Shown here piece after piece: positions 17,264-56,783 of a DNA stretch of 64,000 nt (position 1 is its first letter; each line of letters begins with the position of its first letter). The notes beneath the pieces were generated by a model. That model searched no databases and was not told the origin of the DNA. It saw only the letters and a program-made list of their open reading frames with translations. Location of the stretch: positions 186,001-250,000 of the IMG/VR virus record IMGVR_UViG_3300026078_000017; one strand, written 5' to 3'. Position numbers and translations under genes: made by a program.

Positions 17264-17271
17264 GTGTATCC

Positions 17272-20917: not shown

Positions 20918-21233
20918 CGGACCTCACTGTTATATATCTCTCTTTACTAAGACGAGTAAAGTCGTTGATTAATGCCACAAGGGCTGTTCTACTGAGACGA
21001 ACACTGCTTAAGGCTTCCTCAACAGCGTATTTTACTTCTTTTGAATCAAAGAAAAGCTTCATTTCTAGAAGACTCTCTAGTGCTCCATATATTCCATTTA
21101 AAGTCTCAAGTGCATTTTCCAACTTGTCTTCAATTGAGAAGATAATTCTGGCAAACTTGATCAGATAGAAGGTTTCAACCCCTAAAAGACCTAACAAAAG
21201 AACAATAAGAGTAACTAGGAGAAATATCAACAT
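20850..21233 (-). CDS. Membrane-anchored coiled-coil protein
   Basis: N-terminal hydrophobic helix (LIFLLVTLIVLLLGLLGV) followed by a heptad-rich region. Confidence 0.55.
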   Translation of the reverse strand: MLIFLLVTLIVLLLGLLGVETFYLIKFARIIFSIEDKLENALETLNGIYGALESLLEMKLFFDSKEVKYAVEEALSSVRLSRTALVALINDFTRLSKERYITVRSDEEDEQELEGGRKDRLPPSIER

Positions 21234-21234: not shown

Positions 21235-22413
21235 TTACACTACGCTTCCCAAAACCGCATCATAAGCTGTGGAAATTGCTTGAAAAGAGTGTGTTTTCAA
21301 CAATTTACCCTGAAGCTCCTCAGCCCACTGTTTTGGAATGGTCGAGTTTTCATAGAACTTGAGGACACGCTTCTTGAAGTCTTCCTCGTCAGCAATGCCC
21401 CATTGAGAGCCTGGCATCCAGATTTCATTGTCAAAACGACCTGGAGGAACTGCTCCTACCTTGGTATCAACCTTGATGTACTTGCCTTGACCCAGGAACT
21501 CTGTGTGAGCTGACCAACCAGAGGCAATCACTGGAACACCGCTTGCTGCCGCCTCTAAAATCGGTAAACCGAATCCTTCACCATGGGTGAGGGTTACTAG
21601 CGCCTTGATGGAAGGGTGCTTATAGAGCCTTACAACCTCCTCGTCGTTCATTTCCCCGTGAAGAAGATAAAGTTTTGGATTTGTGCCTTTGTTGACTTGG
21701 CTAAGAAGACCCGTCAACTGTTGCTTGCACAAGAACTCATCTGCCTTGGTGTAACGACCCATGTTGGTCTTCAGAACAATGCCAACGTCTGGCTTGTCTG
21801 CAAAGACCTCAAACAGCCACTTGAGCGTAAATGGAAGGTTCTTTCGGTCGGTAGCTGCGTCACCACCCGTGATCTGACCAAATACCAAGAAGTTAAATGC
21901 CGTGTCGGTTTTGAAGTCAAGAGGCTCAACTGTGGAAGACTCTAGAATCTTGTCAAAGAAAGCCTCGGGAACAACAACGATTGGGGTTGTGACCTTTCCA
22001 GAGTTCATGAACACAGACTTGGTAAACTCAGAAGGAACAATAACCAAGGTCATCTTGTTTACGTGTTCAATCCACTTTGGATTACAGCGGTCTGCCTCTA
22101 CGCCTGCCGTCATACCAATATTTACCTTACCAAGTTCAGGACACCACTCATTTGGGAGCTGGAGTTGGATTGTCACATCATAAAGCTTCTTTTGCTTTTG
22201 GGTGGCACTTGCCTGAAAACAACGACCAATCAGGTCATTCTGGGCATAGGTGTCAACATACCAAGGAGTACCTCCCCAGTTCAAAAGTTCTGTCGTAATG
22301 TCCAAGTTGCCATTCTTGTCGGCACGGTCAAACAACCACCTTGCAACTTGTCTTGCGTGAACTCCATAACCACTCTGTGAAAGAAGTGGCGCTCTCAGAA
22401 GAACTGTTTTCAT
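21235..22413 (-). CDS. Glycosyltransferase, GT4/GT-B fold
   Basis: SGYGVHAR N-terminus; HGEGFGLPILEAAASGVPVIASGW (EX7E) motif. Confidence 0.85.
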   Translation of the reverse strand: MKTVLLRAPLLSQSGYGVHARQVARWLFDRADKNGNLDITTELLNWGGTPWYVDTYAQNDLIGRCFQASATQKQKKLYDVTIQLQLPNEWCPELGKVNIGMTAGVEADRCNPKWIEHVNKMTLVIVPSEFTKSVFMNSGKVTTPIVVVPEAFFDKILESSTVEPLDFKTDTAFNFLVFGQITGGDAATDRKNLPFTLKWLFEVFADKPDVGIVLKTNMGRYTKADEFLCKQQLTGLLSQVNKGTNPKLYLLHGEMNDEEVVRLYKHPSIKALVTLTHGEGFGLPILEAAASGVPVIASGWSAHTEFLGQGKYIKVDTKVGAVPPGRFDNEIWMPGSQWGIADEEDFKKRVLKFYENSTIPKQWAEELQGKLLKTHSFQAISTAYDAVLGSVV

Positions 22414-23852
22414 TTTGCGCTTGCCTTTGTGATTTTGATGTTTTTCATCAAGTGAGCCGTAATGTCCATTGGAAGTTTTGCAACACTTGGGTCAATTTTA
22501 ATTTGCTTCTGTTCAAAGAGCTGTTGAGTAGCTTCCTGTTGATTCTTTGGTTGTGGATTTGGATTATCGATGAGAGAAAGACTCCAAGTCTTTGGTTTGT
22601 TTGCCTTGTACTTGAGGATTGTGTCTTCAAGGGTTCTATCCCAGTCAGCAACCATCTTCTCATAAGAGAACTCAAAGTTCGTGTACTCAAGTAGCTTCTG
22701 CTTCATAGCTACTTTCTCTTCTGGTGTGTACTCGTAAACCTTCATGAAGGCATCCACAACCTGTTGGTGATTTGTGAAGTCTTCATAAATGTATGGAACC
22801 ATCTGAGAACCAACGAGCTGTTGACTTGCTGGTGGAATGGCTACTCCGTTTTCTGAGCCGTCTCTGTGATCAATGACCTGACGAGTCAAACCACCAGTGG
22901 TAAGAGCAATGATTGGCTTACCAACCATCATCTGAATCAAGGTAGACAAACCAAAACCTTCAGCCTTGGCAATGTTGATTAGAACGTCAGACATGTTGTG
23001 AACGATGTTCATGTCACTTGGATTAAGCTTTTCTGTGGAGAACATCAGGTGCTCTCTAAGACCATAGAGATTGCTTACCTCAGCCAAGTTGCCGCCTTCG
23101 ACGTCAAATGGATCTGTGTGCATAATCATCATGGCTTTTCTGTGTCCATGCTTTTTTTCAAGAGCATCAAGGAACTCACTGAAGCATGCAATGACATCAG
23201 AGCCCATTTTACGATGAGCATTTCGGTTAACCCACAAGACCTTGAACCAGTCAGCCTTGTCTCCGAACTTGCCAGTATTGAACTCCGTCATCTTTTCTTC
23301 AGGAAGTGGATAGTAGATTTCCTTTGGAAAGCTGTGAGGAATGTAGTTCGTCTTCTCAGGGAAATGAGGCTGAACTAACTCATATGTCTTATATGCAAGA
23401 CAGTTGATGAGGTCAGTTGAGTTGTACCAAATCTCATTGAACTTTGGATATGGACCATTATCCCACACGTGCCAGTAAACAAGTGGAGCGAGTTGATGAA
23501 TTTCATCCAAGACTTCCCAGGTCCAAATGAACTGACGTGGATCAGTAAACAAGAACACAGCATCTGGACGCTCTGACAACAAGATCTGACGAAGTTGTTC
23601 CTTCGTACCAAAACCATCAACTGGTTTGATGATCATGTCAGGATGTGGTTGAGATACACGATAATCGGAGTGCTTCTGTGCACCACCCAAACAAACAAAC
23701 TTGTACTTGCCGGTATTGAGTAGACCATTGAACAATGCGCCAGCCTGGACGCCTACACCTGAGGTAGACAAAGGATGATCGCAAAGCGTTAAAATCTTGA
23801 ACTTCTTTTTGGGAAGTTGTGCCTGTATGTCGCTTGGGTTAAATCCGGTCAT
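22410..23852 (-). CDS. Glycosyltransferase, GT4/GT-B fold
   Basis: SGVG N-terminus; NRNAHRK; AEGFGLSTLIQMMVGKPII motif. Confidence 0.85.
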   Translation of the reverse strand: MTGFNPSDIQAQLPKKKFKILTLCDHPLSTSGVGVQAGALFNGLLNTGKYKFVCLGGAQKHSDYRVSQPHPDMIIKPVDGFGTKEQLRQILLSERPDAVFLFTDPRQFIWTWEVLDEIHQLAPLVYWHVWDNGPYPKFNEIWYNSTDLINCLAYKTYELVQPHFPEKTNYIPHSFPKEIYYPLPEEKMTEFNTGKFGDKADWFKVLWVNRNAHRKMGSDVIACFSEFLDALEKKHGHRKAMMIMHTDPFDVEGGNLAEVSNLYGLREHLMFSTEKLNPSDMNIVHNMSDVLINIAKAEGFGLSTLIQMMVGKPIIALTTGGLTRQVIDHRDGSENGVAIPPASQQLVGSQMVPYIYEDFTNHQQVVDAFMKVYEYTPEEKVAMKQKLLEYTNFEFSYEKMVADWDRTLEDTILKYKANKPKTWSLSLIDNPNPQPKNQQEATQQLFEQKQIKIDPSVAKLPMDITAHLMKNIKITKASAK

Positions 23853-25855
23853 TTCTTTGTTTCCATTTCAAGTAACAATGTACGCTGTCTATCGCTCGTT
23901 ACTGTGTCTTTCATTAAGTTCATCAAGTCATCTTGATACATTATTTTGGCAAGTTCCTTGAACTTTACTTTTGGTTCCCAACCAAGAATGTTTCTTGCTT
24001 TTGTTGGGTCGCTTTCAAGATGCGTAACTTCATGAGGTCTGAGTTGTTGTGGGTCGAACACTACGTATTTTTCCCAATCTAGCCCTGCTTGTTCAAAAAC
24101 TGCAATTACAAACTCTTTTACAGAGTGACTTTCTCCTGTGCCAATAACGAAGTCATCTGGAACATCATGTTGAAGCATTTTCCACATGCACTCCACGTAC
24201 TCTCTGGAGAAACCCCAGTCACGCTTGGCGTCAAGGTTACCCAGAAGAAGCTTGTCTTGTTTACCCAAGGTAATGTTTGCTACAGCCTTTGTAATCTTTC
24301 TTGTTACGAAGTTTTCGCCACGTCTTGGAGATTCATGATTATGTAAAATACCAACGGCAATGAACATTTTGTATGCCTCACGATAGTTCACACAAATATT
24401 ATGTGCAGCTACCTTGGCACAAGCATAAGGACTTGCTGGCATGAAAGCGGTCTGTTCATTCTGAGGATGTTGGGGATTGAAACCAAACTGCTCAGAAGAA
24501 CCAGCCTGATAAATACGGGTATGAGGAATCAAAACCTTTGCTGCGTTGAGAAGTCTGAGGGTTCCCATGGCAACAACATCAAATGTCTCTTCAGGACAGT
24601 CAAAGCTGACTCTTACATGAGACTGAGCTGCTAGATTGTAAATCTCATCAGGCTTGTATTCTTCCAAAATCTTCCACAGGGAACTTGAATCCTGCATGTT
24701 TCCATAAACAGAAATGAAGTTTGGATGTTCGATTATGTTCTTCATCCATGGGTGCATGCTTTGGGAGTTTCGACGAAACATACCAACAACGACGTAGTTC
24801 TTCAAAAGTAAGAACTCAGCAAGGTAGCTTCCATCTTGACCAGCCACTCCAGTGATTAAGGCGACTTTACGGTGAGTGTCTTCTTTTTTCATGTTTGGAT
24901 TTTTATTCTGGGTTTCCAAGAAGAAATCATAAGCATTTTTTAATGAATCTTCGAAGGTAATTTTAGGCTTCCAACCCAATTTTGTCTGTCTTGACACATC
25001 CGAAAGTTTTTGAAACATTCCATCAGGTCTTGAGGTGTTGAAGGCAAACTTGATTTTTTGTTCAGAACCTACCTTGGTTTCCCCAGTAAGAACCTCAACA
25101 GCCTTTTCATAGATTTCCTTGATACTCAGGTCATATCCAGTAGACACGTTCATGATGTCTGGAACTTCATCGAACTTATCCAAGGAGAAAAAGATAAAAT
25201 CTGCTAAGTCAGCAGCATCCATGAACTCTCTTCTTGGTGTGCCAGTTCCCCAAATCTCAATATAAGTGTCAGACTGTGTTTCCAGTCTTATCTTGGCCTC
25301 ATGAACCTTACGAATGATGGCTGGAAGAAGATGGCTTGCTTCAGGGTCAAAGTGATCCCATCTACCAAACAAGTTGCAAGGAATATAGGTTTTATATGAG
25401 ACACCCTTTTCTTCAGAAGCATACTGACAGGCTCTTTGAACTGCATTTTTAGCAATCGCGTAACCTTCATTGGTTGGCTCAAGAGGACCAGTGAACAGAT
25501 ACGACTCCTTCATTGGCTGTTGAGCCTCACGTGGATACATGCAGGTAGAACCAAGATTAATCATCTTGGATACCCCGAGCTGTTTTGCAGCTCTTACCAC
25601 ATTCAAACCCATGGTGATGTTATCCATCATGAAATTGAACATGTTGGTTTTGTTGGCCTGAATGCCACCAACCAAGCCAGCCGTGTGAATGATGAGGTCT
25701 GGCTTGGTAATGTCTATTGTCTCAACAACTTGAGCAAAGTTCAACAAGTCGAGGTCCTTGCGTGAGGGAGCAATGATTTCGTGTTGTTGAGCTGCTGGAT
25801 GTTCTAGGATATTTCTTCCTACCATTCCAGTGCCACCAGTTAAAAGGATCTTCAT
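23849..25855 (-). CDS. fcl-gmd: Fused GDP-L-fucose synthase (Fcl/GMER, about aa 1-315) and GDP-mannose 4,6-dehydratase (Gmd, aa 322-668)
   Basis: Two Rossmann motifs (TGGTGMVG; ITGVAGQDGSYLAE). Fcl motifs STCMYP, YAIAK, WGTGTPRREF; Gmd motifs NLAAQSHV, SSEQFG, SPYACAK, NHESPRRGENFVTRKI. Confidence 0.92.
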   Translation of the reverse strand: MKILLTGGTGMVGRNILEHPAAQQHEIIAPSRKDLDLLNFAQVVETIDITKPDLIIHTAGLVGGIQANKTNMFNFMMDNITMGLNVVRAAKQLGVSKMINLGSTCMYPREAQQPMKESYLFTGPLEPTNEGYAIAKNAVQRACQYASEEKGVSYKTYIPCNLFGRWDHFDPEASHLLPAIIRKVHEAKIRLETQSDTYIEIWGTGTPRREFMDAADLADFIFFSLDKFDEVPDIMNVSTGYDLSIKEIYEKAVEVLTGETKVGSEQKIKFAFNTSRPDGMFQKLSDVSRQTKLGWKPKITFEDSLKNAYDFFLETQNKNPNMKKEDTHRKVALITGVAGQDGSYLAEFLLLKNYVVVGMFRRNSQSMHPWMKNIIEHPNFISVYGNMQDSSSLWKILEEYKPDEIYNLAAQSHVRVSFDCPEETFDVVAMGTLRLLNAAKVLIPHTRIYQAGSSEQFGFNPQHPQNEQTAFMPASPYACAKVAAHNICVNYREAYKMFIAVGILHNHESPRRGENFVTRKITKAVANITLGKQDKLLLGNLDAKRDWGFSREYVECMWKMLQHDVPDDFVIGTGESHSVKEFVIAVFEQAGLDWEKYVVFDPQQLRPHEVTHLESDPTKARNILGWEPKVKFKELAKIMYQDDLMNLMKDTVTSDRQRTLLLEMETKK

Positions 25856-26538
25856 TTTCTTACCTTAAAGACTCCATAACTGACACAGTCATTGTAGACT
25901 GGGCTATAAAGTAATGATTTGTCTGCGTTTTGCTTCATTACAACTGCATCACATGGTTCAAACAAGTCAAAGGCATCAAGAGTAAAGTCTGTCATGCCAT
26001 ATGAGGTATTTTGATCCTCTGTCTTTAGGCCAGCTCGGTTTCTGGCTCTTTCAAGTTCATTCCATGGAAGACATGACTGGTCATAGTGATCCCAGTACTC
26101 ATCCAAGGTAATAACCATTTTTCCACCTGGACGAAGAACTCTGTGCATTTCCTTCAAAATCTTCTTGAAGAGGTCAAAGTTATCAATGTGTTCAAATGTA
26201 GAAATGGCGTAAACTAAGTCGATGGAGTTATCTGGCATCTGAAGGTTCGATGCATCCATCCACAAGACTTTATGGTTTGGAGTATTGATTTCTTCATTCT
26301 TGATTCGAGAGTCGAAGTCAAATCCAAGGTAGGATTTCGGCTTTAGGTTGTCTCTAACGAACTCATGCCAGTTGTGCTCTGAAGGTAAACCAGTTCCAAA
26401 GTCAATAACGTCCAATCCTTCTACAGGCTCTACAAAAGCAGCCCACATGTACTCATAAGGTCTGGAACCCCAGTTTCCAAAACGAATGCCAGGCAACTGT
26501 GGGTCTGAGGTTTTAAAGTATCCAAATTTTTTCATCAC
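25852..26538 (-). CDS. Class I SAM-dependent methyltransferase
   Basis: VIDFGTG motif I; DASNL..PDNSIDLVYAISTFEHI; RVLRPGGKMVIT. Confidence 0.85.
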   Translation of the reverse strand: MMKKFGYFKTSDPQLPGIRFGNWGSRPYEYMWAAFVEPVEGLDVIDFGTGLPSEHNWHEFVRDNLKPKSYLGFDFDSRIKNEEINTPNHKVLWMDASNLQMPDNSIDLVYAISTFEHIDNFDLFKKILKEMHRVLRPGGKMVITLDEYWDHYDQSCLPWNELERARNRAGLKTEDQNTSYGMTDFTLDAFDLFEPCDAVVMKQNADKSLLYSPVYNDCVSYGVFKVRK

Positions 26539-27473
26539 AACACCTTCAGGATATTATTGATTCGATTCACGAAAGTGTGTTTGTCCTTGACCTTTTGAAC
26601 CAATTCTCTTAGCGTTTGGGGATCTGGGTTTTCTTCCCACAGTTTTGCCTTAAGGTACATTTCTGCTGTGTCAGGAGAATATGGAAGCTTTTGGTCAAAC
26701 AAATCCCACACCGTCTGAGAGTTGGTTGCCGTCATACGACCAAAGGATAGGTTTTTAAAGACACGACAAGGCACATAGCCCTTGTCTACTTGCCAGGACC
26801 CCTGAAGGGCTGGGGCTATCCAGGACTCGGCTATAGCACGAGGCTGGAGGTCATTCTGGAGCTTGGCATGAATAAGTTGGACTCCATCACCCTTGGCTGC
26901 CTGAGCCAAGTCTTGAATTTTGTCATCATTCCTGTGAGGACCACCCATGATGCTACCAATCCAAAAGATTTGCTTGCGACGTTTGTGTTGCATGGCAATC
27001 GTGTGGTCTGGGTCTATTTCACTTGGAAGCAGATTTGTTGCCCATGGTTGGTAAAGAGTTCTGTTGTCACACCCGTGATCAGGTCTGGAATAATCCGGAT
27101 CTTTTTGATAATAGGCGAGCTGTTCAAGGTCAACAGGAACAACATTTCTTGTCAAACAGTCATGAGTGTAAACCTGAAGGTTCAAGACGTTCGGAAGAAT
27201 AGGGCGATACTTGTCCAGGTTGCAGTTATGAATGACGTACTTGCTTGACGCAACAATTGGAATGTTTTGATCAACCTGTCCTTCAGTGAGGAACAGGCAA
27301 TTCTCAAAAGAAAGACCAGAGACATCATCGGAGTTGTCCAGCCATAAAACCTCATATCCCATGTAGTTGAAGGTTCGATACCAGGAGTCATGAATAAAAG
27401 CAAAAGTGTTTGCCGTTCTAGCATCCAGGAGTTTATGACCCCAAACAACTACCTTGTTAAATTTTTCTGTCAT
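26535..27473 (-). CDS. Putative glycosyltransferase (CgeB-like GT-B)
   Basis: IFWIGS and YVPCRVFKNLSFG resemble CgeB-type RxFE motifs; cluster context. Confidence 0.5.
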   Translation of the reverse strand: MTEKFNKVVVWGHKLLDARTANTFAFIHDSWYRTFNYMGYEVLWLDNSDDVSGLSFENCLFLTEGQVDQNIPIVASSKYVIHNCNLDKYRPILPNVLNLQVYTHDCLTRNVVPVDLEQLAYYQKDPDYSRPDHGCDNRTLYQPWATNLLPSEIDPDHTIAMQHKRRKQIFWIGSIMGGPHRNDDKIQDLAQAAKGDGVQLIHAKLQNDLQPRAIAESWIAPALQGSWQVDKGYVPCRVFKNLSFGRMTATNSQTVWDLFDQKLPYSPDTAEMYLKAKLWEENPDPQTLRELVQKVKDKHTFVNRINNILKVL

Positions 27474-28479: not shown

Positions 28480-29342
28480 CCGAAGTAAGTGTCTATCGGA
28501 ATCTGGAAGTTGTGTTCCTTGGCTTTTATGAATTGATCCATTTTAATTCCCCTGATTTCCTCGGGCATTATTGTCCTGGAAATGAAGTCTGCCACGAAGT
28601 CAGTCTTGGCTTGGTGATGTTGTTGACTCTGATGATCCCAGTTACTGGACCTACAATAGTGCAAGAAGGCATTTCCAAAGAACTCAAGGTTCCACTCAGG
28701 ATTGTATGAACCAACAATCTCATCAGGAAGACAATGCATGTTTTTGTTTTCTGGCTTGATATGCCAGGTGTTGTGCATGGTTCTTACTGCGGCTTTCACC
28801 TCAGGATGCTTCTCAAAATACAAGTGAAGTCCACCACCCGTGTCAAGACGAGTGTTGTTAATTCCAATACCTTCCCAGTCAATCGTCTCAGCCTCTGGCA
28901 ACAGCTCAGGATTTGCCATCACAATCACAGGTGTGAGATAGTGGTAAATGTGATCTCTCTGTTGTTTACACCCACCAAAGGTTCCTGTGTCTCCAAGAAA
29001 CTCATTGACGGAAAATGGAGCAACCATAAAGCAGTCGCCATCAAGGAACATCACATAGGAATCCTTGTGTTTACACATGTCAGAACGCCAAACCATGTTC
29101 AAGGAATCGGCATGATGTTTTCCTGCCAGGTGAAAGGGTGTATCTGAGTGAGTCTGGATTGTAAAAAGCCCAGCAGCTTCTGCTGTTGTATTAATAGCAT
29201 CTCTCAAACTCTGTTCTCTGGCATTATTGATGATGGTGAAGTCAAAAGGGTCTTTTAGGTGCTTTTGAAGGGTCATCAACTGCCATCTGATAAACTCAGG
29301 ACGATTGTAGTGAACAGCATATACATGTACAGGTTTAGTCAT
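28458..29342 (-). CDS. Putative GT-A fold glycosyltransferase
   Basis: VHYNRPEFI...TIINNA...MFLDGDCF (DxD) pattern. Confidence 0.55.
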   Translation of the reverse strand: MTKPVHVYAVHYNRPEFIRWQLMTLQKHLKDPFDFTIINNAREQSLRDAINTTAEAAGLFTIQTHSDTPFHLAGKHHADSLNMVWRSDMCKHKDSYVMFLDGDCFMVAPFSVNEFLGDTGTFGGCKQQRDHIYHYLTPVIVMANPELLPEAETIDWEGIGINNTRLDTGGGLHLYFEKHPEVKAAVRTMHNTWHIKPENKNMHCLPDEIVGSYNPEWNLEFFGNAFLHYCRSSNWDHQSQQHHQAKTDFVADFISRTIMPEEIRGIKMDQFIKAKEHNFQIPIDTYFGWGKCNT

Positions 29343-30189
29343 TTTCTTTCATCCACTCTCTCAGTTCACAAAGTTGATCACAAATGTTTGGTGCTTCTCC
29401 ATTGCTAGGCAACAGAGCACGATTGACTGCTTTTGGAGCTTTAACATTTTCAACCAAAGGATTTTTCCACTCATTACAAAACACGTTGCTAATGTTAACC
29501 AGAAGATCATATTTTGTTATTGGTGCACTTGCTAGTTGTACGAGCATTCCTGGTGGAAGAGTTAGCAATTGACTTTTGTTGAAAATAAATCTCTCAAGGT
29601 ATTGAGCCAAATATAAAGTTGTTACACCAGACCAAATATGGTTGTTAAATCCTGGAACGCTTTGTTTTGGACTGTTCCTAAACCACTCAAACAAACCATG
29701 TTCAGTGTCGGCCGGACCAATGATGCTTGTCCTTACCACGATAGTGTCTGATGGTTCTCCAAGAGCCTTAGAAATACCATAGTCATCATCTGCGTCCTTT
29801 GGTGCTGAGGCGATATATCGTTCACCTGGTTTGAGGTCGCCCTTAAACACACAGTCACTTGAAATGTGAATTAGTTTGACATTAGCCTTTTTACAAGCCA
29901 ATGCCAGCTTCCATGGAAATACAGCATTAACCTCATAAAAGTCTGAGGACTTCAATCCTTCTTTTTGCTTGATGTTTCCAATGCAGTTAATGACAAAGTC
30001 ATAACCTTCAAAACTTGGTAGCAAGTCCGACTTCACGTCAAACTTGATAACTCCCACAGCTTTTCTTGTAGGCATCCAAGAAGGAATTTTGTCTCGAACA
30101 GTAAAGGTAACATTGTGATCTTTAGAAATCAAATACCTAACAACCACACTGCCCAACATCCCTGTGCCGCCGAGTACCAATACTTTCAT
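29335..30189 (-). CDS. RmlD-like NDP-sugar 4-keto reductase (SDR)
   Basis: LGGTGMLG, VINCIG, HISSDCVF, YGISKALGE (YxxxK), RTSIIG, WSGVTT. Confidence 0.85.
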   Translation of the reverse strand: MKVLVLGGTGMLGSVVVRYLISKDHNVTFTVRDKIPSWMPTRKAVGVIKFDVKSDLLPSFEGYDFVINCIGNIKQKEGLKSSDFYEVNAVFPWKLALACKKANVKLIHISSDCVFKGDLKPGERYIASAPKDADDDYGISKALGEPSDTIVVRTSIIGPADTEHGLFEWFRNSPKQSVPGFNNHIWSGVTTLYLAQYLERFIFNKSQLLTLPPGMLVQLASAPITKYDLLVNISNVFCNEWKNPLVENVKAPKAVNRALLPSNGEAPNICDQLCELREWMKEND

Positions 30190-30875
30190 GTTCTCATTTC
30201 CTTGTGGTTTTTATCAAGAGCCAAGAGTCTCTTCTGAAATGGAAGAGACCAGGACTCAGGATAACAGTAAGAAGGCGACAAGGACAAAGTAGGAGGATTA
30301 TCGATAAAATACCTGTTCATGTGAGACTCATCATGCCAAACGGCTATGATATTTTTGGCTTTATCTTCCAAAACACGACTACCAATGGTTTCACACATCT
30401 TCAGGTATTCTTTAGCAGAACCTCCATTGAATCCACCAGCATAATACACAGTGCCCTCTGAAGGCGCTACAAAGGCTTTGGAGACACGATTGGTCTCATA
30501 GGTGAATGCCTCCCTTGGCTTGTTGAAAAAGCCCGGGTGGATGGTTCCTACGCGGTCTGAGAGCACTTCATCCCCAACCGTGTCCACAAACAACATGTCG
30601 GCATCACAATAAAAGAGATAATCCATCTCTTCTAGTTGCTTCTTTGTCGAAGGCATGGTGAACACATTATACCGAAATAAGGTTGGTCCCGGCCAAGCCA
30701 TATGGATTTGTGGGATAATAACCTGACCAGGTTCTGGTGTGATGCCATGTTTGTTTGTGAAGACAAACATAGTAACCTCATGTTTGGTCAAAAAATGCTT
30801 TTTAACCGACTCCCATAAAGGTGGTACAAAGTCATAGTATTTATTTGTGGCAATAACCAACAGTCCAATTTTCAC
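30186..30875 (-). CDS. GT6 family glycosyltransferase (ABO-like alpha-1,3-GalNAc/Gal transferase)
   Basis: IATNKY, WP..TL.RY, YLFYCDAD, HPGF, YYAGGFNGG, WHDESHMNRYF: the full GT6 motif set. Confidence 0.9.
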   Translation of the reverse strand: MKIGLLVIATNKYYDFVPPLWESVKKHFLTKHEVTMFVFTNKHGITPEPGQVIIPQIHMAWPGPTLFRYNVFTMPSTKKQLEEMDYLFYCDADMLFVDTVGDEVLSDRVGTIHPGFFNKPREAFTYETNRVSKAFVAPSEGTVYYAGGFNGGSAKEYLKMCETIGSRVLEDKAKNIIAVWHDESHMNRYFIDNPPTLSLSPSYCYPESWSLPFQKRLLALDKNHKEMRT

Positions 30876-30879
30876 AGGA

Positions 30880-31482
30880 TTACTCCTTGAGCTTCATGAA
30901 CAAGACAACTTCCTTTGGGTTCACACGAACCCAAGTAAATGAAGTGACCTTTGGGTTCTGGCTCAAGAAGTTCTCAATATCTTGCTTGTTGTAGCGGTTA
31001 TGGAAAAGTTGATCTGGCTCAAAGAAGTCAATCTTCTCTGGTTCATCTGTTGGCTCAATGAAGAAAATGTTGATGGCTTCTTTTTGTCCAATACGAATCA
31101 TCTCTCCAAGACACTCACGAAACGTAGGAAGATGTTCAAGAACGTGGCGAGAGAAAGCAACCTCAAAGGATGAGTCTGGAAGTGAAATCTCCTCAACTGG
31201 AGAATGAAGCGCAGGAACTCCTTGAGAGGTAATGTGGCTATACAAAACCCAGGAAGAGTCAACTCCCATGTAGGAGATCTCATATCCATCATTCTTGTAG
31301 CCAAAATACTCAGTGGCTGGTCCGCATCCAAGATCTACAAGAGACTTATAGCCTGCATTTTTGACATAGTTTCTTACGAAAACCTTGGACTCTGCGTTGA
31401 AGTCACCAATCCAGCTCTTAAACTCACCGAATTTCTGACCAACGTTCTTGTCCCACCATGTTTGATTAAATCTCTCAGTCAT
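30880..31482 (-). CDS. Class I SAM-dependent methyltransferase
   Basis: LVDLGCGP, MGVDSS, LPDSSFEVAFSRHVLEHL. Start moved to ATG 31482. Confidence 0.85.
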   Translation of the reverse strand: MTERFNQTWWDKNVGQKFGEFKSWIGDFNAESKVFVRNYVKNAGYKSLVDLGCGPATEYFGYKNDGYEISYMGVDSSWVLYSHITSQGVPALHSPVEEISLPDSSFEVAFSRHVLEHLPTFRECLGEMIRIGQKEAINIFFIEPTDEPEKIDFFEPDQLFHNRYNKQDIENFLSQNPKVTSFTWVRVNPKEVVLFMKLKE

Positions 31483-31882
31483 TGTCCCACATTTCCTTCT
31501 CGTAAGAATACTTCTTGGCAATCCACTCTTTGTAAAAATGATGTCCTATGTCTAGAGACACATAGTTGTCTCCTTGCATGCCTTGCTCAGAGTAGTCTAC
31601 ATCGTTACAAGCTTTCTTAGAAAATCCTTTTTTGGCTAGGAACTTATGAAACTCCTGTAGCCACAAGCCATCCGTGTAAATCAGTCCATGTTTATCTGGA
31701 TTCCAGGAACTCTTGTAAAAGTAAACCTTGAGTTCTCCCCAGGGCTTCTGTACAGGTCCATCCCAGGATTCGAAAATAAATCTGGCTCTGGCATCACGCA
31801 TCTTGACTTTTCTGTACTCATTTGACCACAACCCATTGCCGGCTGTTTGAATAAGCTTGTTTATTGCCAGATGTTTTTTCAT
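31475..31882 (-). CDS. Hypothetical phage protein (135 aa)
   Basis: GELKVYF...W...GLIYTD...YSEQGMQGDNYVS pattern that I recall from large-phage hypotheticals; not a sugar enzyme. Confidence 0.6.
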   Translation of the reverse strand: MKKHLAINKLIQTAGNGLWSNEYRKVKMRDARARFIFESWDGPVQKPWGELKVYFYKSSWNPDKHGLIYTDGLWLQEFHKFLAKKGFSKKACNDVDYSEQGMQGDNYVSLDIGHHFYKEWIAKKYSYEKEMWDND

Positions 31883-31883
31883 G

Positions 31884-32606
31884 TTACTTACCTGCTGTTT
31901 GTTGGAGGGCTGCCTTCATTGAGATACAGCAAAGTTGAGGAATCCGTGGGTCATACTTCGGATTATGAGAAACGTTATATTCAACCAGCATCTCATCCAG
32001 GTTTGCAAAATTAAACCAAGAAACACACTTAAGCCATAAGTGATAGTCTTCTGCTACTGGATAGGTGTTGTCGTATCCACCAGTTCTCAAGACAACTTCC
32101 GGGCGAAACACCACAGAAGGGTGGGCAAGGGCATTGTGACCAAGGAGTAGCGTTTTCTTTATTTCTGCATTTTCCTTGGGATAAGTCATCTGACTATTCA
32201 AAACGACTTTGGTCCCTGTGGAATAGTCGACTCTTAGGATTTGAGTACCACAAATATGAACGTCAGGATTTTCTGTCATGAACTTGACTTGTTTTTGGAG
32301 TTTGGTTGGTTCCCAAACGTCATCAGCATCAAGTCGAGCAATCAAGTCTGAACTTGCTTCCCCAAGAATCGTAAAGAGTCCTTTGTTCAAGGCAGGAACG
32401 ATTCCAGGTTCCTTGCAAGAAAGCAAGGTCCAATCTTGACCAGCCTCATCCATAAGGTCACTAACGATTTTTACGGTATTGTCCGTGCAGTTGTTGTCAA
32501 CCAACACAAGACGATAGACTCTATAAGTCTGAACTAATAAAGATCTAATTGCTCTTTCAATGGTTTTCTCACCATTGAACACAGGAAGCAAAACCGCTAC
32601 TTTCAT
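31884..32606 (-). CDS. GT2 glycosyltransferase
   Basis: LLPVFNGEKTIERAIRSL, VDNNCTD, IARLDADD, HPSVVFR, EDYHLW. Confidence 0.9.
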   Translation of the reverse strand: MKVAVLLPVFNGEKTIERAIRSLLVQTYRVYRLVLVDNNCTDNTVKIVSDLMDEAGQDWTLLSCKEPGIVPALNKGLFTILGEASSDLIARLDADDVWEPTKLQKQVKFMTENPDVHICGTQILRVDYSTGTKVVLNSQMTYPKENAEIKKTLLLGHNALAHPSVVFRPEVVLRTGGYDNTYPVAEDYHLWLKCVSWFNFANLDEMLVEYNVSHNPKYDPRIPQLCCISMKAALQQTAGK

Positions 32607-32609
32607 AAA

Positions 32610-33416
32610 TCACCTCTTTACAAAAGTCAAAGGTACTAGTTGATGAGCCGACTTGTTCTTGATTCTTTGGAATGTTTTAATGTCAATCTTCTTGCCTTCA
32701 TTCCACAAGCTAAGCAAGTCTCCTTCAGAACCTCCACCAAACACGTTCTTTACTTCAGACTGCACACGGTTATGGGGAACGTTGAAAACTCTCGATACCG
32801 TGAAACAAGCCATCTGTGGATGAGGAATCTGATTGTGAAGGTGAGACATGTTTCCTTCAAAGGTATTTGGGGATTTCCAGTCACCACTGTTGTTCATGGC
32901 AAACAAGGCGTCTGTCCTACGAAACACGTGCCCATCTACGGACAAAGGGTAATTCCAGTCCCAGTCTGTACCCTTCCAGTTCCACACAAAGAATGGTTCT
33001 TTGGTTACGCCTGCATGTGGAACACTCTGTCTTGATTGTGTGGAATAACAAAAATCTAGGTGCTTGCCAAGTCTGAGACTAAAGCAAAACACTGGAAGGT
33101 TGCCTCCAAGAAATCTTGTTATCAGGTCAAAATCCACATTATCCTTAAACACGTCATCGTCTGTGAAGTACACGACATGTTCCTTGGCTCCATTCACAAG
33201 ACCCATGGTTTGTGTGCGAAAGTCAAACTCAGGATGAAAGTTCACTTTTGGGAAAGCCTGTTTCGCCTGTTCCATAGGCCAAATATACTCGTGGTCAGCC
33301 TTGTAAAGGACATTCACATCTGTAGGATCCATGTTCGAGTTATAAAACATGGACTCCAACAGAGCAAACAACTGCATTGGTCTGTTTTTAGAAAACACAA
33401 TTGCGGTAATGTTCAT
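32610..33416 (-). CDS. Putative GT-A fold glycosyltransferase
   Basis: FSKNRPMQL, YFTDDD, YPLSVDGHVFR; cluster context. Confidence 0.55.
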   Translation of the reverse strand: MNITAIVFSKNRPMQLFALLESMFYNSNMDPTDVNVLYKADHEYIWPMEQAKQAFPKVNFHPEFDFRTQTMGLVNGAKEHVVYFTDDDVFKDNVDFDLITRFLGGNLPVFCFSLRLGKHLDFCYSTQSRQSVPHAGVTKEPFFVWNWKGTDWDWNYPLSVDGHVFRRTDALFAMNNSGDWKSPNTFEGNMSHLHNQIPHPQMACFTVSRVFNVPHNRVQSEVKNVFGGGSEGDLLSLWNEGKKIDIKTFQRIKNKSAHQLVPLTFVKR

Positions 33417-34414
33417 AGTGGATGTTTCTCGCACCAGTCTTTCATGATTTCAGGTGCGTTTCTCAAAATCTTGACAGAAGGAGTTGTGGAACCATCCCAA
33501 GGACTGTGGAAAATCCATCCGCCAGTCTTGTCGCGAAGTTCCTTTGCCTTGGCTTCAATCATCTCATCCGTAACCTGTTCCCAGGGAACATCAAAGAAGA
33601 CATTCGAGGAACGATTGATGTCATTATACATTGACTTCCAGAAATCCCCAAAGAAGTGCTTATACTTCTCAATCTTGCCCTTGATGCTGTACCAGGAATA
33701 GTGATACACCGTTGGCAAACCAAAACTCATTTGATTATACCATTTTTCATAGGCTTCAAGAGCCTTAGGATCTTTTAGGGCTGCCATTCTCAAGGACTCA
33801 AGTTGACTATTCATGAAGTTCAAACTTGGAACCGGAAGTCCTTGTTCTTTATTGATATAGTCACAGGTGTCCGTTCCTGGCTTTGCATAAACTAGTCCGT
33901 TGACAACCTGACGATGTGTAACCGGCATACCATGAGTAATGCCTGGGTGATTGCGACTTACACGCCACTTCCATGGGTTGATGTCCACACGAACTTTGTC
34001 TGGACCGCCCCAAAACTCCACAACTGGCAAGCACAACAGAGGAACATCCTCAAGGTTTTTTGCTTGAACAATCAAGTTATCCAAAATAGGTCTGTCAGAG
34101 GCATGAACGACTTCATCACAGTCCATCTGCCAAAGATAGTCGCCTGTACACTTCTCACGAGCTGCTTGCTTGAGCACACCATCATACACTCCGTGGTTTG
34201 GAGCATTCCAGTCCATGTCGGCATAATAAACAAAGAGCTTACCTTTGTTGGCTGCCATCATGTCTGCGAGAACTTTTCTCGTGTCATCGGTTCCGTCCGA
34301 GGAGTCCATTACAACGACTTCATCACAGAAGTCGATAAGAGACTGAATGGACTCCCTAAAAGGGTAATCCATGGCAATGCAGTTACGAGTGGTTGTATAT
34401 CCAGATAGTTTCAT
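33413..34414 (-). CDS. GT2-like glycosyltransferase
   Basis: YPFRESIQSL..FCDEVVVMD...DDT, KQAAREKC, WQMDCDEV (DxD). Confidence 0.75.
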   Translation of the reverse strand: MKLSGYTTTRNCIAMDYPFRESIQSLIDFCDEVVVMDSSDGTDDTRKVLADMMAANKGKLFVYYADMDWNAPNHGVYDGVLKQAAREKCTGDYLWQMDCDEVVHASDRPILDNLIVQAKNLEDVPLLCLPVVEFWGGPDKVRVDINPWKWRVSRNHPGITHGMPVTHRQVVNGLVYAKPGTDTCDYINKEQGLPVPSLNFMNSQLESLRMAALKDPKALEAYEKWYNQMSFGLPTVYHYSWYSIKGKIEKYKHFFGDFWKSMYNDINRSSNVFFDVPWEQVTDEMIEAKAKELRDKTGGWIFHSPWDGSTTPSVKILRNAPEIMKDWCEKHPL

Positions 34415-34422
34415 TTGATTCC

Positions 34423-35334: not shown

Positions 35335-35586
35335 TTATTCTTCAATTCCTGCTTCAATTTTTTCTTTCTTTGTCATTGGTGCCAAACAATATTTTGTTGA
35401 TCGCTTTATTGTTCTACCCAATGGGGTTTCAATAGATGTTTCATCAATGAAACATTCATTAACATCTATAGAATCTTTTTCTTCACCTTCTCCTAAGAGA
35501 CTTTTCACGAAATTCATCGCAAGTTTCTTAGTAGAAAAATAATGTGTATTAGAAGTCGAATAAATATAGACAGAATAAATCTTCAT
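35335..35586 (-). CDS. Hypothetical AT-rich protein (83 aa)
   Basis: ORF overlapping the IMPDH stop (ATGA); markedly AT-rich. Confidence 0.5.
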   Translation of the reverse strand: MKIYSVYIYSTSNTHYFSTKKLAMNFVKSLLGEGEEKDSIDVNECFIDETSIETPLGRTIKRSTKYCLAPMTKKEKIEAGIEE

Positions 35587-37976: not shown

Positions 37977-38019
37977 AGGAACCCCCGTGAAGTGATTATT
38001 TGCTGTGGCTGCGCCTAAG

Positions 38020-56256: not shown

Positions 56257-56261
56257 GTATC

Positions 56262-56777: not shown

Positions 56778-56783
56778 GAGAGG

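What the first reader, a model, noticed from the sequence alone, without database searches (positions are those of the whole stretch)
21235..34414. 13-kb self-contained glycan synthesis cluster directly beside the baseplate module
Seen: 2 GT4, a GT2, 3 further GT-A/GT2-like genes, a GT6, a CgeB-like GT, two nucleotide-sugar pathways and two methyltransferases, all tightly coupled; another GT-like gene sits at 37 kb. No flippase, polymerase or membrane-anchored initiating transferase was recognised. Inference: cytoplasmic glycosylation of virion proteins with methylated deoxysugars, reminiscent of giant-virus fibre glycosylation, rather than host O-antigen conversion.
Basis: partly seen in the sequence, partly recalled or inferred. 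Interest (0 to 1): 0.65.

Follow-up and report, generated by a model that had tools for sequence, protein, structure and literature searches.

The report
Variable sugar-coat island in jumbo phage
A 320-kb phage carries two glycosyltransferases shared by hundreds of related phages, next to a fast-changing block of sugar-making genes that most likely decorates a phage-made target, probably virion proteins, with strain-specific glycans.

Summary
The gene inventory is real. Window 21235-34432 holds 14 co-directional, overlapping minus-strand genes: 8 glycosyltransferases, a fused GDP-fucose synthase/GDP-mannose dehydratase, a UDP-GlcNAc dehydratase plus reductase, two methyltransferases and one unknown.

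It is not one unit. The two GT4 genes (21235-23852) are core genes. They were adjacent in all 80 fetched relatives, out of at least 576 IMG/VR matches. They also occur in cultured Flavobacterium, Microcystis and Rhodothermus phages, and are predicted to form a heterodimer. The other 12 genes (23849-34432) are a hypervariable island between GT4b and a conserved nuclease. In relatives this slot is empty or holds different sugar genes.

No cluster protein has a membrane segment. The genome record (about 81% complete) shows no priming transferase, flippase or polymerase, no thymidylate-synthase-like base hydroxylase and no integrase. Published LC-MS of a relative's DNA shows no glycosyl-nucleoside.

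Best reading (about 0.5): stepwise cytoplasmic glycosylation of a phage-encoded protein, probably a virion protein. The main rival is remodelling of host envelope glycans. No data show the acceptor.

Glycan clusters in large phages are known, so this is a new variant of a known kind.

The parts
21235..22413 (-). GT4a: core GT4 (GT-B) glycosyltransferase, 392 aa, with an invariant EX7E motif (E279, E287)
   Evidence: Pfam Glycos_transf_1 E 1.5e-8; phrog_2170. Directly downstream of GT4b in 80/80 fetched loci. 31% identical to Flavobacterium phage immuto gp91 (E 3e-55) and to a Mel-JY01 protein (E 2e-50). Invariant columns in A8.
22410..23852 (-). GT4b: core GT4 glycosyltransferase, 480 aa, predicted partner of GT4a
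   Evidence: Pfam E 1.9e-7. Profile A1 confirms at least 576 IMG/VR stretches. Homologues in immuto, Mel-JY01, RM378 and LR756508. PDB profile hits are GT4 enzymes, including chlorovirus B736L. Predicted complex ipSAE 0.89 against best control 0.16.
23849..25855 (-). Island gene 1: fused GDP-L-fucose synthase (residues 1-320) and GDP-mannose 4,6-dehydratase (residues 330-645)
   Evidence: Pfam GDP_Man_Dehyd E 6e-136. NCBIfam gmd 412.8 bits (cut-off 415) and Fcl 298 bits (cut-off 500). Separate Fcl and Gmd genes occupy the same position in many relatives.
25852..26538 (-). Island gene 2: class I SAM methyltransferase
   Evidence: Methyltransf_11 E 7e-13.
26535..27473 (-). Island gene 3: unnamed family, weakly CgeB-like (GT-B C-terminal domain)
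   Evidence: Glyco_trans_1_2 E 0.0019, below cut-off. 381 homologues, almost all unnamed; 2 of the 120 listed carry PF13524. The AF2 model was too poor to use (pLDDT 51).
27457..28479 (-). Island gene 4: UDP-GlcNAc 4,6-dehydratase of the Mg534/CapE/FnlA/PseB type
   Evidence: Polysacc_synt_2 E 4.5e-76. Best solved relative is 4TQG, Megavirus Mg534 (E 2.5e-75), ahead of CapE at E 2e-51.
28458..29342 (-). Island gene 5: orphan GT-A-fold glycosyltransferase with an invariant D101-x-D103
   Evidence: No Pfam, NCBIfam or PHROG hit. 75 unnamed homologues, several on contigs of roughly 290-375 kb. AF2 pLDDT 95.9. Every listed Foldseek PDB match is a GT-A transferase, prob 1.0, TMq 0.29-0.44.
29335..30189 (-). 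Island gene 6: RmlD-like SDR, probably the 4-keto reductase of the acetamido-sugar route
   Evidence: Epimerase E 5.5e-19 and RmlD_sub_bind E 2e-14. PDB RmlD E 1.5e-5. Homologues are named dTDP-4-dehydrorhamnose reductase.
30186..30875 (-). Island gene 7: GT6-family glycosyltransferase with a DXD (D-A-D) motif
   Evidence: PF03414 E 1.6e-50. Closest solved relative is Bacteroides ovatus BoGT6a, E 2.4e-57. The alignment puts D-A-D where BoGT6a has N-A-N.
30880..31521 (-). Island gene 8: class I SAM methyltransferase (probable ATG start at 31482)
   Evidence: Methyltransf_11 E 1e-8; alternative start.
31475..31882 (-). Island gene 9: 135-aa protein of unknown function
   Evidence: No hit in Pfam, NCBIfam or PHROGs. 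Conserved at 57% in the closest relative.
31884..32606 (-). Island gene 10: GT2 glycosyltransferase without membrane segments
   Evidence: Glycos_transf_2 E 4e-25; maximum hydropathy 0.79.
32610..33434 (-). Island gene 11: GT-A-like protein with invariant D92-D93 (probable ATG start at 33416)
   Evidence: Atlas: virus-dominated glycosyltransferase clusters; structural TM 0.62 to GT2 models and 0.91 to one domain of a GT-D bifunctional transferase. Invariant residues in A3. Lead-level evidence.
33413..34432 (-).
   Evidence: Glycos_transf_2 E 4e-4, below cut-off. Profile A5 against the heparosan synthase GT2 domain E 0.006.
34423..35286 (-). PD-(D/E)XK nuclease: conserved far boundary of the island
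   Evidence: PDDEXK_1 E 1.6e-16. It abuts GT4b (gap 46-99 nt) in 17 distant relatives and lies 1.3-8.5 kb away in 10 others. Same order in immuto and Mel-JY01.
37071..38144 (-). Possible further GT-B-like protein (real start probably near residue 31)
   Evidence: No Pfam hit. Atlas: viral clusters, some carrying Glycos_transf_1; structurally like a domain fused to GT2, GT1 or GT9 proteins. Conserved beside IMPDH and the nuclease in relatives. Lead only.
20850..21233 (-). 127-aa protein with one N-terminal membrane helix, between GT4a and the baseplate genes
   Evidence: Hydropathy 3.11 at residue 1. Conserved in position across most of the clade. No counterpart in immuto. Its role and link to the glycan genes are unknown.
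15422..17745 (-). Baseplate genes: Baseplate_J/gp6-like wedge (15422-17263) and gp25-like protein (17272-17745)
   Evidence: Baseplate_J E 1.5e-5; phrog_219. 31% identical to the immuto baseplate wedge protein. The gp25-like protein matches the immuto 'baseplate assembly protein', E 6e-9.

Best explanation
The region has two layers.

Layer 1 is a pair of distinct GT4-family (GT-B, retaining-type) glycosyltransferases, GT4b and GT4a. They are core genes of a very large clade of T4-like phages and probably act as a heterodimer.

Layer 2 is a 10.6-kb hypervariable island of 12 genes, inserted between GT4b and a conserved PD-(D/E)XK nuclease gene. The island converts host GDP-mannose to GDP-L-fucose through a fused Fcl-Gmd protein. 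It also converts host UDP-GlcNAc to a UDP-2-acetamido-2,6-dideoxy-L-hexose, most simply L-RhaNAc, through a Mg534-like dehydratase/epimerase and an RmlD-like reductase. It supplies six more soluble glycosyltransferases (a GT6 with DXD, a GT2, three divergent GT-A proteins and one CgeB-like protein) and two SAM methyltransferases.

Nothing in the genome record can prime a lipid carrier or flip or polymerise a repeat unit. The sugars are therefore most likely added one by one in the cytoplasm to a soluble acceptor. The GT4 pair would make the conserved inner step and the island enzymes would build a strain-specific outer glycan.

The pair is retained in phages of Bacteroidota, Cyanobacteria and Rhodothermus, so the acceptor is most likely phage-encoded. 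DNA looks unlikely, so a phage protein, probably on the virion surface, is the best candidate.

Shown: the gene content, the solubility of the proteins, the core-plus-island architecture and purifying selection. Inferred: the sugar products, the order of action, the heterodimer and the acceptor.
For: - Gene identities.
- No TM segment in any cluster protein. No ORF in the genome has more than 5 predicted TM segments. No Bac_transf match.
- Of 493 island ORFs from relatives, only one has 2 or more TM segments.
- Core status of the pair: 80/80 fetched loci have GT4a next to GT4b, out of at least 576 confirmed IMG/VR matches. All 30 wedge-anchored loci with at least 9 kb upstream show the pair: both genes in 29, and in one GT4a only, at the cut end of the fetched flank.
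- The pair is present and adjacent in Flavobacterium phage immuto, Microcystis phage Mel-JY01 and Rhodothermus phage RM378. RM378 has no visible island.
- Island variability: the slot is 46-99 nt in 17 loci and 1.3-8.5 kb in 10 nuclease-bounded loci. In many other loci no nuclease gene appears within the 10 kb fetched, which is consistent with still larger islands. The 493 ORFs fall into 222 clusters at 40% identity, dominated by sugar dehydratases/epimerases, methyltransferases, aminotransferases, UDP-glucose dehydrogenases and GTs.
- The same island type occurs with added PIG-L deacetylase plus formyltransferase, or an FkbM methyltransferase, in other samples.
- All 14 genes are intact at 57-79% identity in the closest relative, with pN 0.14-0.28 against pS 0.71-0.92.
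- Heterodimer prediction: ipSAE 0.89, best of 3 controls 0.16. That mark was reached by 58 of 80 solved complexes and 2 of 110 mismatched pairs. The runs share at least 96% of contacts and partner pLDDT is at least 84.
- Against DNA as target: no ThyA-family gene. LC-UV-MS/MS of immuto DNA shows only dA, dC, dT and fdPreQ1 (bioRxiv 10.1101/2023.04.13.536721).
- Precedents: glycans on mycobacteriophage capsid and tail-tube proteins (Freeman 2023, as cited in PMC12619734). Megavirus fibrils carry L-RhaNAc and 4-OMe-L-RhaNAc made by Mg534/Mg535 (PMC9614988).
Against: - No direct evidence identifies the acceptor. No virion proteome, glycoproteome or lectin data exist for any member.
- Peripheral O-antigen and capsule GTs also lack TM segments and could act on host lipid-linked intermediates, using the host's own priming enzyme, flippase and polymerase.
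- In the cultured distant relatives the GT pair lies with replication and nucleotide-metabolism genes, not structural genes. Baseplate adjacency is therefore clade-specific.
- A small membrane-anchored protein is conserved next to GT4a in this clade.
- The genome record is only about 81% complete, so absences are provisional.
- No Ser/Thr-rich acceptor tail stands out in structural proteins.
- Sugar identities rest on homology below the NCBIfam equivalog cut-offs.
- The heterodimer is a model, not a measurement.
Confidence: 0.5

Rival explanations
1. Remodelling of host envelope glycans. The soluble GTs and sugar pathways act during infection on host lipid-linked O-antigen, capsule or S-layer glycan intermediates. 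The host supplies the priming transferase, flippase and polymerase. The changed cell surface would block superinfection, or stop progeny from adsorbing to debris. This is the usual reading of the 'LPS / cell-wall modification' clusters in large cyanomyoviruses.
For: - The enzyme families are those of O-antigen and capsule loci.
- The GT6's closest solved relative is a Bacteroides enzyme.
- Hypervariability mirrors surface-polysaccharide loci.
- Comparable clusters in P-SSM2, S-SCSM1 and S-SCSM2R are interpreted this way (PMC12801897).
- A membrane-anchored 127-aa protein is conserved beside GT4a.
- Peripheral GTs need no TM segment.
Against: - The GT4 pair is conserved in phages whose hosts span Bacteroidota, Cyanobacteria and Rhodothermus, with very different envelopes.
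- RM378 keeps the pair with no island.
- The genome record has no integrase, Gtr-type or other multi-pass membrane protein.
- A lytic jumbo phage has little time to renew the surface polysaccharide.
Confidence: 0.25
2. DNA hypermodification. The GTs glycosylate modified bases of phage DNA to evade restriction, as in T-even phages, RB69 and DLP3.
For: - GT-B enzymes glucosylate T4 DNA (general knowledge).
- In distant relatives the GT pair sits next to a nuclease and nucleotide-metabolism genes.
- Diverse DNA glycans made by phage GTs are documented (PMC13326640; Pyle 2024, as cited).
Against: - Known routes need a thymidylate-synthase homologue to make hmC, hmU or 5hoC (PMC13326640). None is in the genome, and no TGT/DpdA either.
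- The Tet/JBP search was blank, but its control was uninformative.
- Immuto carries the same GT pair and a glycan island, and its DNA contains only dA, dC, dT and fdPreQ1 by LC-UV-MS/MS.
- Eight GTs, fucose and acetamido-deoxyhexose pathways and O-methylation are far beyond any known DNA glycan.
Confidence: 0.05
3. A non-virion soluble target. The GT4 pair glycosylates a host protein or a small molecule, for example for host takeover, anti-defence or a protective solute. The island then diversifies that product.
For: - GT4 includes small-molecule enzymes such as BshA, MshA and trehalose synthase, which are among the best PDB and NCBIfam matches.
- There is a weak, sub-threshold match of GT4a to the 'GT4 in conflict systems' family.
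- PHROGs file these GTs under moron/AMG/host takeover.
Against: - Those matches are generic, covering only the nucleotide-binding domain.
- An island with six extra GTs and two rare-sugar pathways implies an oligosaccharide, which is unusual for a signalling or anti-defence small molecule.
- Hypervariable outer structures fit an exposed surface under diversifying selection.
Confidence: 0.12

Closest known systems
Mycobacteriophage virion glycosylation (Che8, Corndog, Myrna; Freeman et al. 2023, as cited in PMC12619734)
   Same: Phage-encoded soluble glycosyltransferases, with methyltransferases (the latter from my own recollection), are proposed or shown to decorate virion proteins. There is no lipid-carrier machinery.
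   Different: Those phages are small siphoviruses of Actinobacteria, with two to a few GTs and no nucleotide-sugar pathways that I know of. Here the phage is a 320-kb T4-like myovirus with 8-9 GTs and two sugar pathways, organised as a deeply conserved GT4 pair plus a hypervariable island. Homology to the mycobacteriophage GTs was not tested, and virion glycans are not demonstrated here.
Giant-virus glycosylation clusters (Megavirus chilensis mg534-mg539; chlorovirus PBCV-1)
   Same: Clade-specific clusters combine nucleotide-sugar synthesis, GTs and methylation to glycosylate virion structures in the cytoplasm. The dehydratase here is closest to Mg534 (E 2.5e-75) and lies one gene away from an RmlD-like reductase, recalling Mg534/Mg535. 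PBCV-1 also encodes GMD and a GDP-fucose synthase (my knowledge).
   Different: This is a bacterial virus. No 2-epimerase (Mg536-like) or pyruvyltransferase is present. A GT6 and a fused Fcl-Gmd protein are present. The acceptor is unknown. The similarity is at the level of single enzymes and logic, not a shared cluster.
'LPS / cell-wall synthesis and modification' clusters of large cyanomyoviruses (P-SSM2, S-SCSM1, S-SCSM2R)
   Same: Large T4-like phages with many GTs and NDP-sugar epimerases. Gmd and Fcl homologues occur in many Synechococcus phages. Function is experimentally unresolved.
   Different: The core GT4 pair found here gave no tblastn match in Kyanoviridae records (one search lists only immuto, Mel-JY01, RM378, TJE1 and LR756508). 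The core-plus-island architecture at a fixed genomic slot is not described for them.
Bacterial cytoplasmic protein O-glycosylation islands (flagellin glycosylation islands; the GtfA/GtfB-initiated serine-rich-repeat adhesin pathway)
   Same: The logic is the same: soluble enzymes act stepwise on a folded or nascent protein before export or assembly. A two-protein GT-B initiating complex is followed by strain-variable accessory GTs. PseB-family dehydratases and methyltransferases occur in flagellin islands (established knowledge).
   Different: Not a member. No NCBIfam GtfA/GtfB or flagellin-pathway equivalog matched. There is no Pse/Leg aminotransferase or synthase. The resemblance is functional analogy only.
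Wzx/Wzy-dependent O-antigen or capsule gene clusters, and Gtr-type seroconversion cassettes
   Same: Nucleotide-sugar genes plus several GTs in one co-directional block, with high inter-strain variability.
   Different: The priming phosphoglycosyltransferase, flippase, polymerase, chain-length regulator and GtrA/GtrC-type membrane proteins are all absent from the genome record.
'Moraphages' (Perez-Hernandez et al. 2025, PMC12619734)
   Same: Metagenomic 200-307-kb jumbo phages with predicted Bacteroidota hosts. Their MCP is related to the Rhodothermus phage, and four core orthogroups are annotated as glycosyltransferases. This resembles the present clade.
   Different: Membership could not be verified because no sequences were to hand. 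The Hc1 histone-like marker reported in the four complete moraphages was not found here. The paper treats the GTs only generically and does not describe the island.

Membership tests
Wzx/Wzy-dependent O-antigen/capsule cluster | Initiating phosphoglycosyltransferase (Bac_transf/WbaP or WecA type) | tested here: not met
   PF02397 has no match in the genome, while the control rang in 10 of 14 genomes. No ORF has more than 5 TM segments. The record is about 81% complete.
Wzx/Wzy-dependent O-antigen/capsule cluster | Multi-pass flippase (Wzx) and polymerase (Wzy), or an ABC exporter | tested here: not met
   Hydropathy scan of all ORFs of 60 aa or more: the maximum is 5 TM segments, in a 1525-aa protein elsewhere in the genome. 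None lies in the cluster. Only 1 of 493 island ORFs from relatives has 2 or more TM segments.
Wzx/Wzy-dependent O-antigen/capsule cluster | Nucleotide-sugar synthesis genes with several GTs in one block | tested here: met
Phage DNA glycosylation (T-even, RB69/DLP3 type) | ThyA-family enzyme that makes hmC, hmU or 5hoC nucleotides | tested here: not met
   PF00303 has no match; the control rang in 10 of 14 genomes. The requirement is taken from PMC13326640.
Phage DNA glycosylation (T-even, RB69/DLP3 type) | Glycosylated nucleosides in virion DNA | not testable with these tools
   Indirect only. Immuto carries the homologous GT pair, and its DNA shows dA, dC, dT and fdPreQ1 and no glycosyl-nucleoside.
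Phage DNA glycosylation via TET/JBP oxidation | Tet_JBP dioxygenase | tested here: inconclusive
   PF12851 has no match, but nothing rang in the control genomes either.
CAZy GT6 | Match to the GT6 catalytic domain above the curated threshold | tested here: met
   PF03414 at 172 bits against a cut-off of 25. BoGT6a E 2.4e-57 and human GTA/GTB about E 5e-45. The NCBIfam Gltr_6 subfamily scores 214 bits, below its cut-off of 250.
CAZy GT6 | DXD metal-binding motif (NXN in the Bacteroides enzyme) | tested here: met
   D-A-D aligns with the N-A-N of BoGT6a.
GDP-L-fucose de novo pathway (Gmd + Fcl) | Both enzyme domains present and full length | tested here: met
   Gmd covers profile positions 1-340 of 342 at 412.8 bits (cut-off 415). 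Fcl covers 4-306 of 308 at 298 bits (cut-off 500). Pfam GDP_Man_Dehyd scores 453.8 bits. Both are just under or under the equivalog cut-offs, so product identity is inferred.
Mg534/Mg535-type UDP-L-RhaNAc pathway | Inverting UDP-GlcNAc 4,6-dehydratase/5-epimerase | tested here: met
   Best solved relative is Mg534 (4TQG), E 2.5e-75 over residues 9-329. Its identity and activity come from PMC9614988. The PseB and FnlA equivalog cut-offs are not reached.
Mg534/Mg535-type UDP-L-RhaNAc pathway | Mg535-like 3-epimerase/4-reductase | tested here: inconclusive
   An RmlD-like SDR lies one gene away. No Mg535 sequence was available for comparison, and 3-epimerase residues were not checked.
Virion-protein glycosylation system (mycobacteriophage or giant-virus type) | Glycans covalently attached to virion proteins | not testable with these tools
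   Needs purified virions. No cultured member of the immediate clade is known.
Virion-protein glycosylation system (mycobacteriophage or giant-virus type) | Virus-encoded soluble GTs, with or without methyltransferases, and no lipid-carrier machinery | tested here: met
GtfA/GtfB-type two-protein O-glycosyltransferase | Membership of the GtfA/GtfB sequence families | tested here: not met
   No accessory-Sec GtfA/GtfB model appears among the NCBIfam hits at E 0.01 or better.
GtfA/GtfB-type two-protein O-glycosyltransferase | Two adjacent GT-B proteins that form a complex | tested here: met
   Prediction only. ipSAE 0.89 against best control 0.16; the mark was reached by 58 of 80 solved complexes and 2 of 110 mismatched pairs.

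The most novel reading that the evidence does not exclude
A very large and widespread clade of T4-like phages has a dedicated, ancient two-subunit glycosyltransferase that primes a virion protein. The clade includes at least 576 IMG/VR matches and cultured phages of Flavobacterium, Microcystis and Rhodothermus. At a fixed genomic slot beside that enzyme sits an 'O-antigen-like' hypervariable island that writes strain-specific outer glycans (fucose, acetamido-deoxyhexoses, N-formyl and O-methyl variants) onto the virion. In effect this would be a serotype locus for phage particles, evolving under an arms race with host defences, grazers or receptors. It would be the first such system for phages of diderm bacteria.
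Probability: 0.35. Interest if true: 0.8.

Novelty: new variant of a known kind. Interest (0 to 1): 0.6.

Why it matters
Virion glycosylation is experimentally established only for some mycobacteriophages and for giant viruses of eukaryotes. Large phage glycan clusters, as in cyanomyoviruses, remain functionally unassigned.

This locus offers a clean handle on that question. It combines a conserved, probably heterodimeric GT4 pair that also exists in cultivable phages (immuto, Mel-JY01, RM378) with a slot whose content turns over rapidly. If the target is the virion, phage particles in soil and water would carry strain-specific glycan coats. That would affect adsorption, immune or defence recognition, particle stability, and how phage diversity is read from metagenomes.

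The locus also supplies several unannotated glycosyltransferase families, including a confidently modelled orphan GT-A, and a natural Fcl-Gmd fusion that could be useful for glycoengineering.

Tried and rejected
- Near-identity DNA search of the 13 kb against 50,697 phage records found no match.
- A single-protein pattern scan with GT4b found only one close relative. A profile was needed.
- PDB sequence and profile searches for the orphan 294-aa, 274-aa and 312-aa proteins were blank.
- The AF2 model of the 312-aa CgeB-like protein, from a 5-sequence alignment, was unusable (pLDDT 51). Its fold remains unverified.
- The T4 late-promoter motif TATAAATA is absent from the window. Sigma-70-like promoter matches did not exceed shuffled expectation, and the terminator-like matches (24 found against 15.9 expected) were not interpretable. 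No statement on expression timing is possible.
- The sequencing-run search found only the probable source sample (a rhizosphere metagenome, DNA) and no RNA run.
- A scan for Ser/Thr-rich acceptor tails in genome ORFs gave nothing convincing.
- The Hc1 'moraphage' marker was not found, so membership of that named lineage is left open.
- Freeman et al. 2023 is not held in the library and is cited only through other papers.
- The 127-aa membrane-anchored protein has no counterpart next to the immuto GT pair, so it was rejected as part of the deep core.
- Host O-antigen conversion of the classical Gtr or Wzy type was rejected for lack of any membrane component.
- No alternative genetic code was needed.

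Full report
**Context.** The window is bases 186001-250000 of a single 320,479-bp IMG/VR viral contig. The record is linear and CheckV estimates it to be about 81% complete. It encodes a T4 gp23-like major capsid protein elsewhere in the genome and a Baseplate_J wedge protein in the window. The only run holding the sequence is a rhizosphere metagenome, which is probably the source sample. The nearest cultured relatives are distant, with about 31% identity in the wedge protein. They are Flavobacterium phage vB_FspM_immuto and Microcystis phage Mel-JY01, alongside an uncultured 484-kb phage, LR756508. The 'moraphage' lineage of 200-307-kb jumbo phages, with predicted Bacteroidota hosts and four core glycosyltransferase orthogroups (PMC12619734), resembles this clade. 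I could not verify membership, and its Hc1 marker is absent here.

**The observation.** From 10 kb to 45 kb every credible ORF is on the minus strand. Between 21235 and 34432 there are 14 genes joined by overlaps of 4-47 nt or gaps of 1-4 nt with the longest ORFs; internal ATG starts reduce the overlaps to 22 nt or less and leave gaps of at most 8 nt. Family scans confirm the following:
- two GT4 enzymes;
- a single 668-aa fusion of GDP-L-fucose synthase and GDP-mannose 4,6-dehydratase;
- two class I SAM methyltransferases;
- a Polysacc_synt_2 UDP-GlcNAc 4,6-dehydratase;
- an RmlD-like reductase;
- a GT6 (E 1.6e-50);
- a GT2.

**The genes without clear family hits.** Four proteins needed extra work.
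- The 294-aa protein has 75 unnamed homologues, several on contigs of roughly 290-375 kb, and an invariant DxD. It gives a very confident AF2 model (pLDDT 95.9). Every listed Foldseek PDB match to that model is a GT-A glycosyltransferase.
- The 274-aa protein is GT-A-like by Atlas features and structure, and has an invariant DD motif.
- The 339-aa protein is weakly GT2-like.
- The 312-aa protein is only weakly CgeB-like, and its model failed.

The ORF at 37 kb is GT-B-like at lead level. No other GT1 or GT2 match exists in the genome.

**Two layers, not one cluster.** I fetched relatives through the wedge protein and mapped the window's proteins onto them. This showed that GT4a and GT4b travel with the baseplate-proximal genes throughout the clade. 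Genes 3-14 recur as a complete set only in the closest IMG/VR relative. A profile of GT4b confirmed at least 576 IMG/VR stretches. In all 80 loci fetched, GT4a follows GT4b directly. All 30 wedge-anchored loci with enough upstream sequence show the pair: both genes in 29, and in one GT4a only, at the cut end of the fetched flank.

Upstream of GT4b the distance to the PD-(D/E)XK nuclease gene varies:
- 46-99 nt in 17 distant relatives;
- 1.3-8.5 kb in 10 others;
- in many loci no nuclease gene appears within the 10 kb fetched, which is consistent with still larger islands;
- 10.6 kb in the window.

The 493 ORFs found in this slot fall into 222 clusters at 40% identity. Their Pfam tally is dominated by GDP-mannose dehydratase and epimerase families, methyltransferases, UDP-glucose dehydrogenases, DegT aminotransferases, GT2, FkbM, WbqC and GT47, plus homing endonucleases. 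Two further genomes from other samples carry the window's island type with small edits. One adds a PIG-L deacetylase and a formyltransferase. The other adds an FkbM methyltransferase and inteins. So the slot behaves like a glycan serotype locus.

**The genes are under selection.** Against the closest relative all 14 genes are intact. Non-synonymous differences are 0.14-0.28 per site, while synonymous sites are saturated at 0.71-0.92. Core genes show the same pattern.

**The pair is ancient and probably a complex.** GT4a and GT4b are not recent paralogues. They share only the EGFGL region. Both have adjacent homologues in immuto (GT4a E 3e-55) and Mel-JY01 (E 2e-50), each preceded by a PD-(D/E)XK nuclease and followed by different glycan genes. 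Rhodothermus phage RM378 has the GT4b homologue followed by a protein whose N-terminus matches GT4a (E 6e-10), and it has no island. GT4a keeps an invariant EX7E motif. In GT4b the second glutamate is kept only in part of the clade.

A complex prediction passed its controls. The ipSAE was 0.89 and the best of 3 controls was 0.16. That mark was reached by 58 of 80 solved complexes and by 2 of 110 mismatched pairs. The runs agreed in at least 96% of contacts, and partner pLDDT was at least 84. A conserved C-terminal segment of GT4b (residues 422-436) lies against GT4a residues 247-255. This supports binding but does not demonstrate it.

**What the island makes.** Fcl-Gmd implies GDP-L-fucose from GDP-mannose. 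The dehydratase's best solved relative is 4TQG (E 2.5e-75). That entry is Megavirus chilensis Mg534, a UDP-GlcNAc 4,6-dehydratase/5-epimerase. Together with the RmlD-like Mg535 it makes UDP-L-RhaNAc, and Megavirus fibrils contain L-RhaNAc and its 4-O-methyl form (PMC9614988). With only a reductase nearby, and no aminotransferase or 2-epimerase, a two-enzyme route to a 2-acetamido-2,6-dideoxy-L-hexose is the simplest reading. This is inferred, because the equivalog cut-offs are not reached.

The GT6 is closest to Bacteroides ovatus BoGT6a but has D-A-D where that enzyme has N-A-N. No sugar nucleotidyltransferase is encoded. The system therefore starts from host GDP-mannose and UDP-GlcNAc.

**The target.**
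- No cluster protein has a membrane segment.
- No ORF in the genome has more than 5 predicted TM segments, and there is no Bac_transf match. Lipid-linked assembly would need host machinery throughout.
- There is no integrase.
- Known DNA glycosylation starts from a ThyA-family enzyme (PMC13326640). None is present.
- Immuto DNA, analysed by LC-UV-MS/MS, contains only dA, dC, dT and fdPreQ1.
- Retention of the GT4 pair across phages of hosts with unrelated envelopes argues for a phage-encoded acceptor.

Precedents for virion glycosylation exist in mycobacteriophages (cited) and in giant viruses. I therefore favour cytoplasmic, stepwise glycosylation of a phage protein, probably on the virion, at about 0.5.

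The main rival is action on host lipid-linked glycans, the usual reading of cyanophage clusters (PMC12801897). It stays at about 0.25, for four reasons. Peripheral O-antigen GTs are also soluble. A small membrane-anchored protein is conserved next to GT4a within this clade, although it is absent from immuto. The baseplate adjacency is not conserved in the distant relatives. The genome record is incomplete.

**Verdict.** Glycan clusters in large phages are known. What is new here is the architecture: a deeply conserved, probably heterodimeric GT4 pair with a hypervariable glycan island at a fixed slot. The presence of the pair in cultivable phages makes the target question directly testable.

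Noticed in passing
window 36619-37092 (-): A 157-aa ORF whose residues 13-57 match the N-terminus of the T4 Gp23 major head protein (Pfam E 9e-8; phrog_138 E 2e-7). The real 654-aa MCP lies 100 kb away. It may be a prohead-core or internal protein with an MCP-like propeptide.
   Followed up: partly
G000:C1:121572-123227 (outside the window; loci L163/L164): The gp23-like major capsid ORF is 654 aa. About 200 residues are inserted between Gp23 profile positions 80 and 113. This could be an extra surface domain, and so a conceivable glycan acceptor.
   Followed up: no
window 35583-36632 (-); L174:1-1547: An IMPDH/GMP-reductase-like gene sits beside the PD-(D/E)XK nuclease here and in Microcystis phage Mel-JY01. 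In one relative the IMPDH gene and the Gmd gene carry intein/LAGLIDADG insertions.
   Followed up: no
window 10390-13836 (-): A 1148-aa tail-module protein has a concanavalin-A-like lectin/glucanase domain (Laminin_G_3, E 5e-13). It is a likely receptor-binding or glycan-binding fibre component.
   Followed up: no
window 20850-21233 (-): A 127-aa protein with a single N-terminal membrane helix and a helical, acidic C-terminus. It is conserved between GT4a and the baseplate genes in most of the clade and has no counterpart in immuto. Function unknown.
   Followed up: partly
L145:24-3605 (+): In one distant relative a 1193-aa ORF with 9 predicted membrane segments and no Pfam match lies just upstream of GT4b. 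It is the only multi-pass protein among 493 ORFs in this slot.
   Followed up: partly
L173:8585-10011: A 326-kb relative has a PIG-L deacetylase and a formyltransferase inserted between the reductase and the orphan GT-A. This predicts an N-formylated instead of an N-acetylated deoxy-amino sugar in that strain.
   Followed up: no
relatives' islands (alignment A7; loci L084-L162): GIY-YIG, NUMOD3 and LAGLIDADG homing-endonuclease domains recur inside the variable slot. They may promote its turnover.
   Followed up: no
window 30186-30875 (-): The phage GT6 carries D-A-D, like the vertebrate enzymes, where its closest solved relative, BoGT6a, has the metal-independent N-A-N. The YYAGGFNGG segment has the small residues associated with GalNAc donors in the human A transferase (my recollection, not tested).
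   Followed up: partly
window 56000-58000: There is a sharp GC-skew excursion (+0.23) next to a block of higher G+C (0.45-0.48) at 52-60 kb. Few long ORFs lie at 56-59.7 kb, and there are no tRNAs in the window.
   Followed up: no
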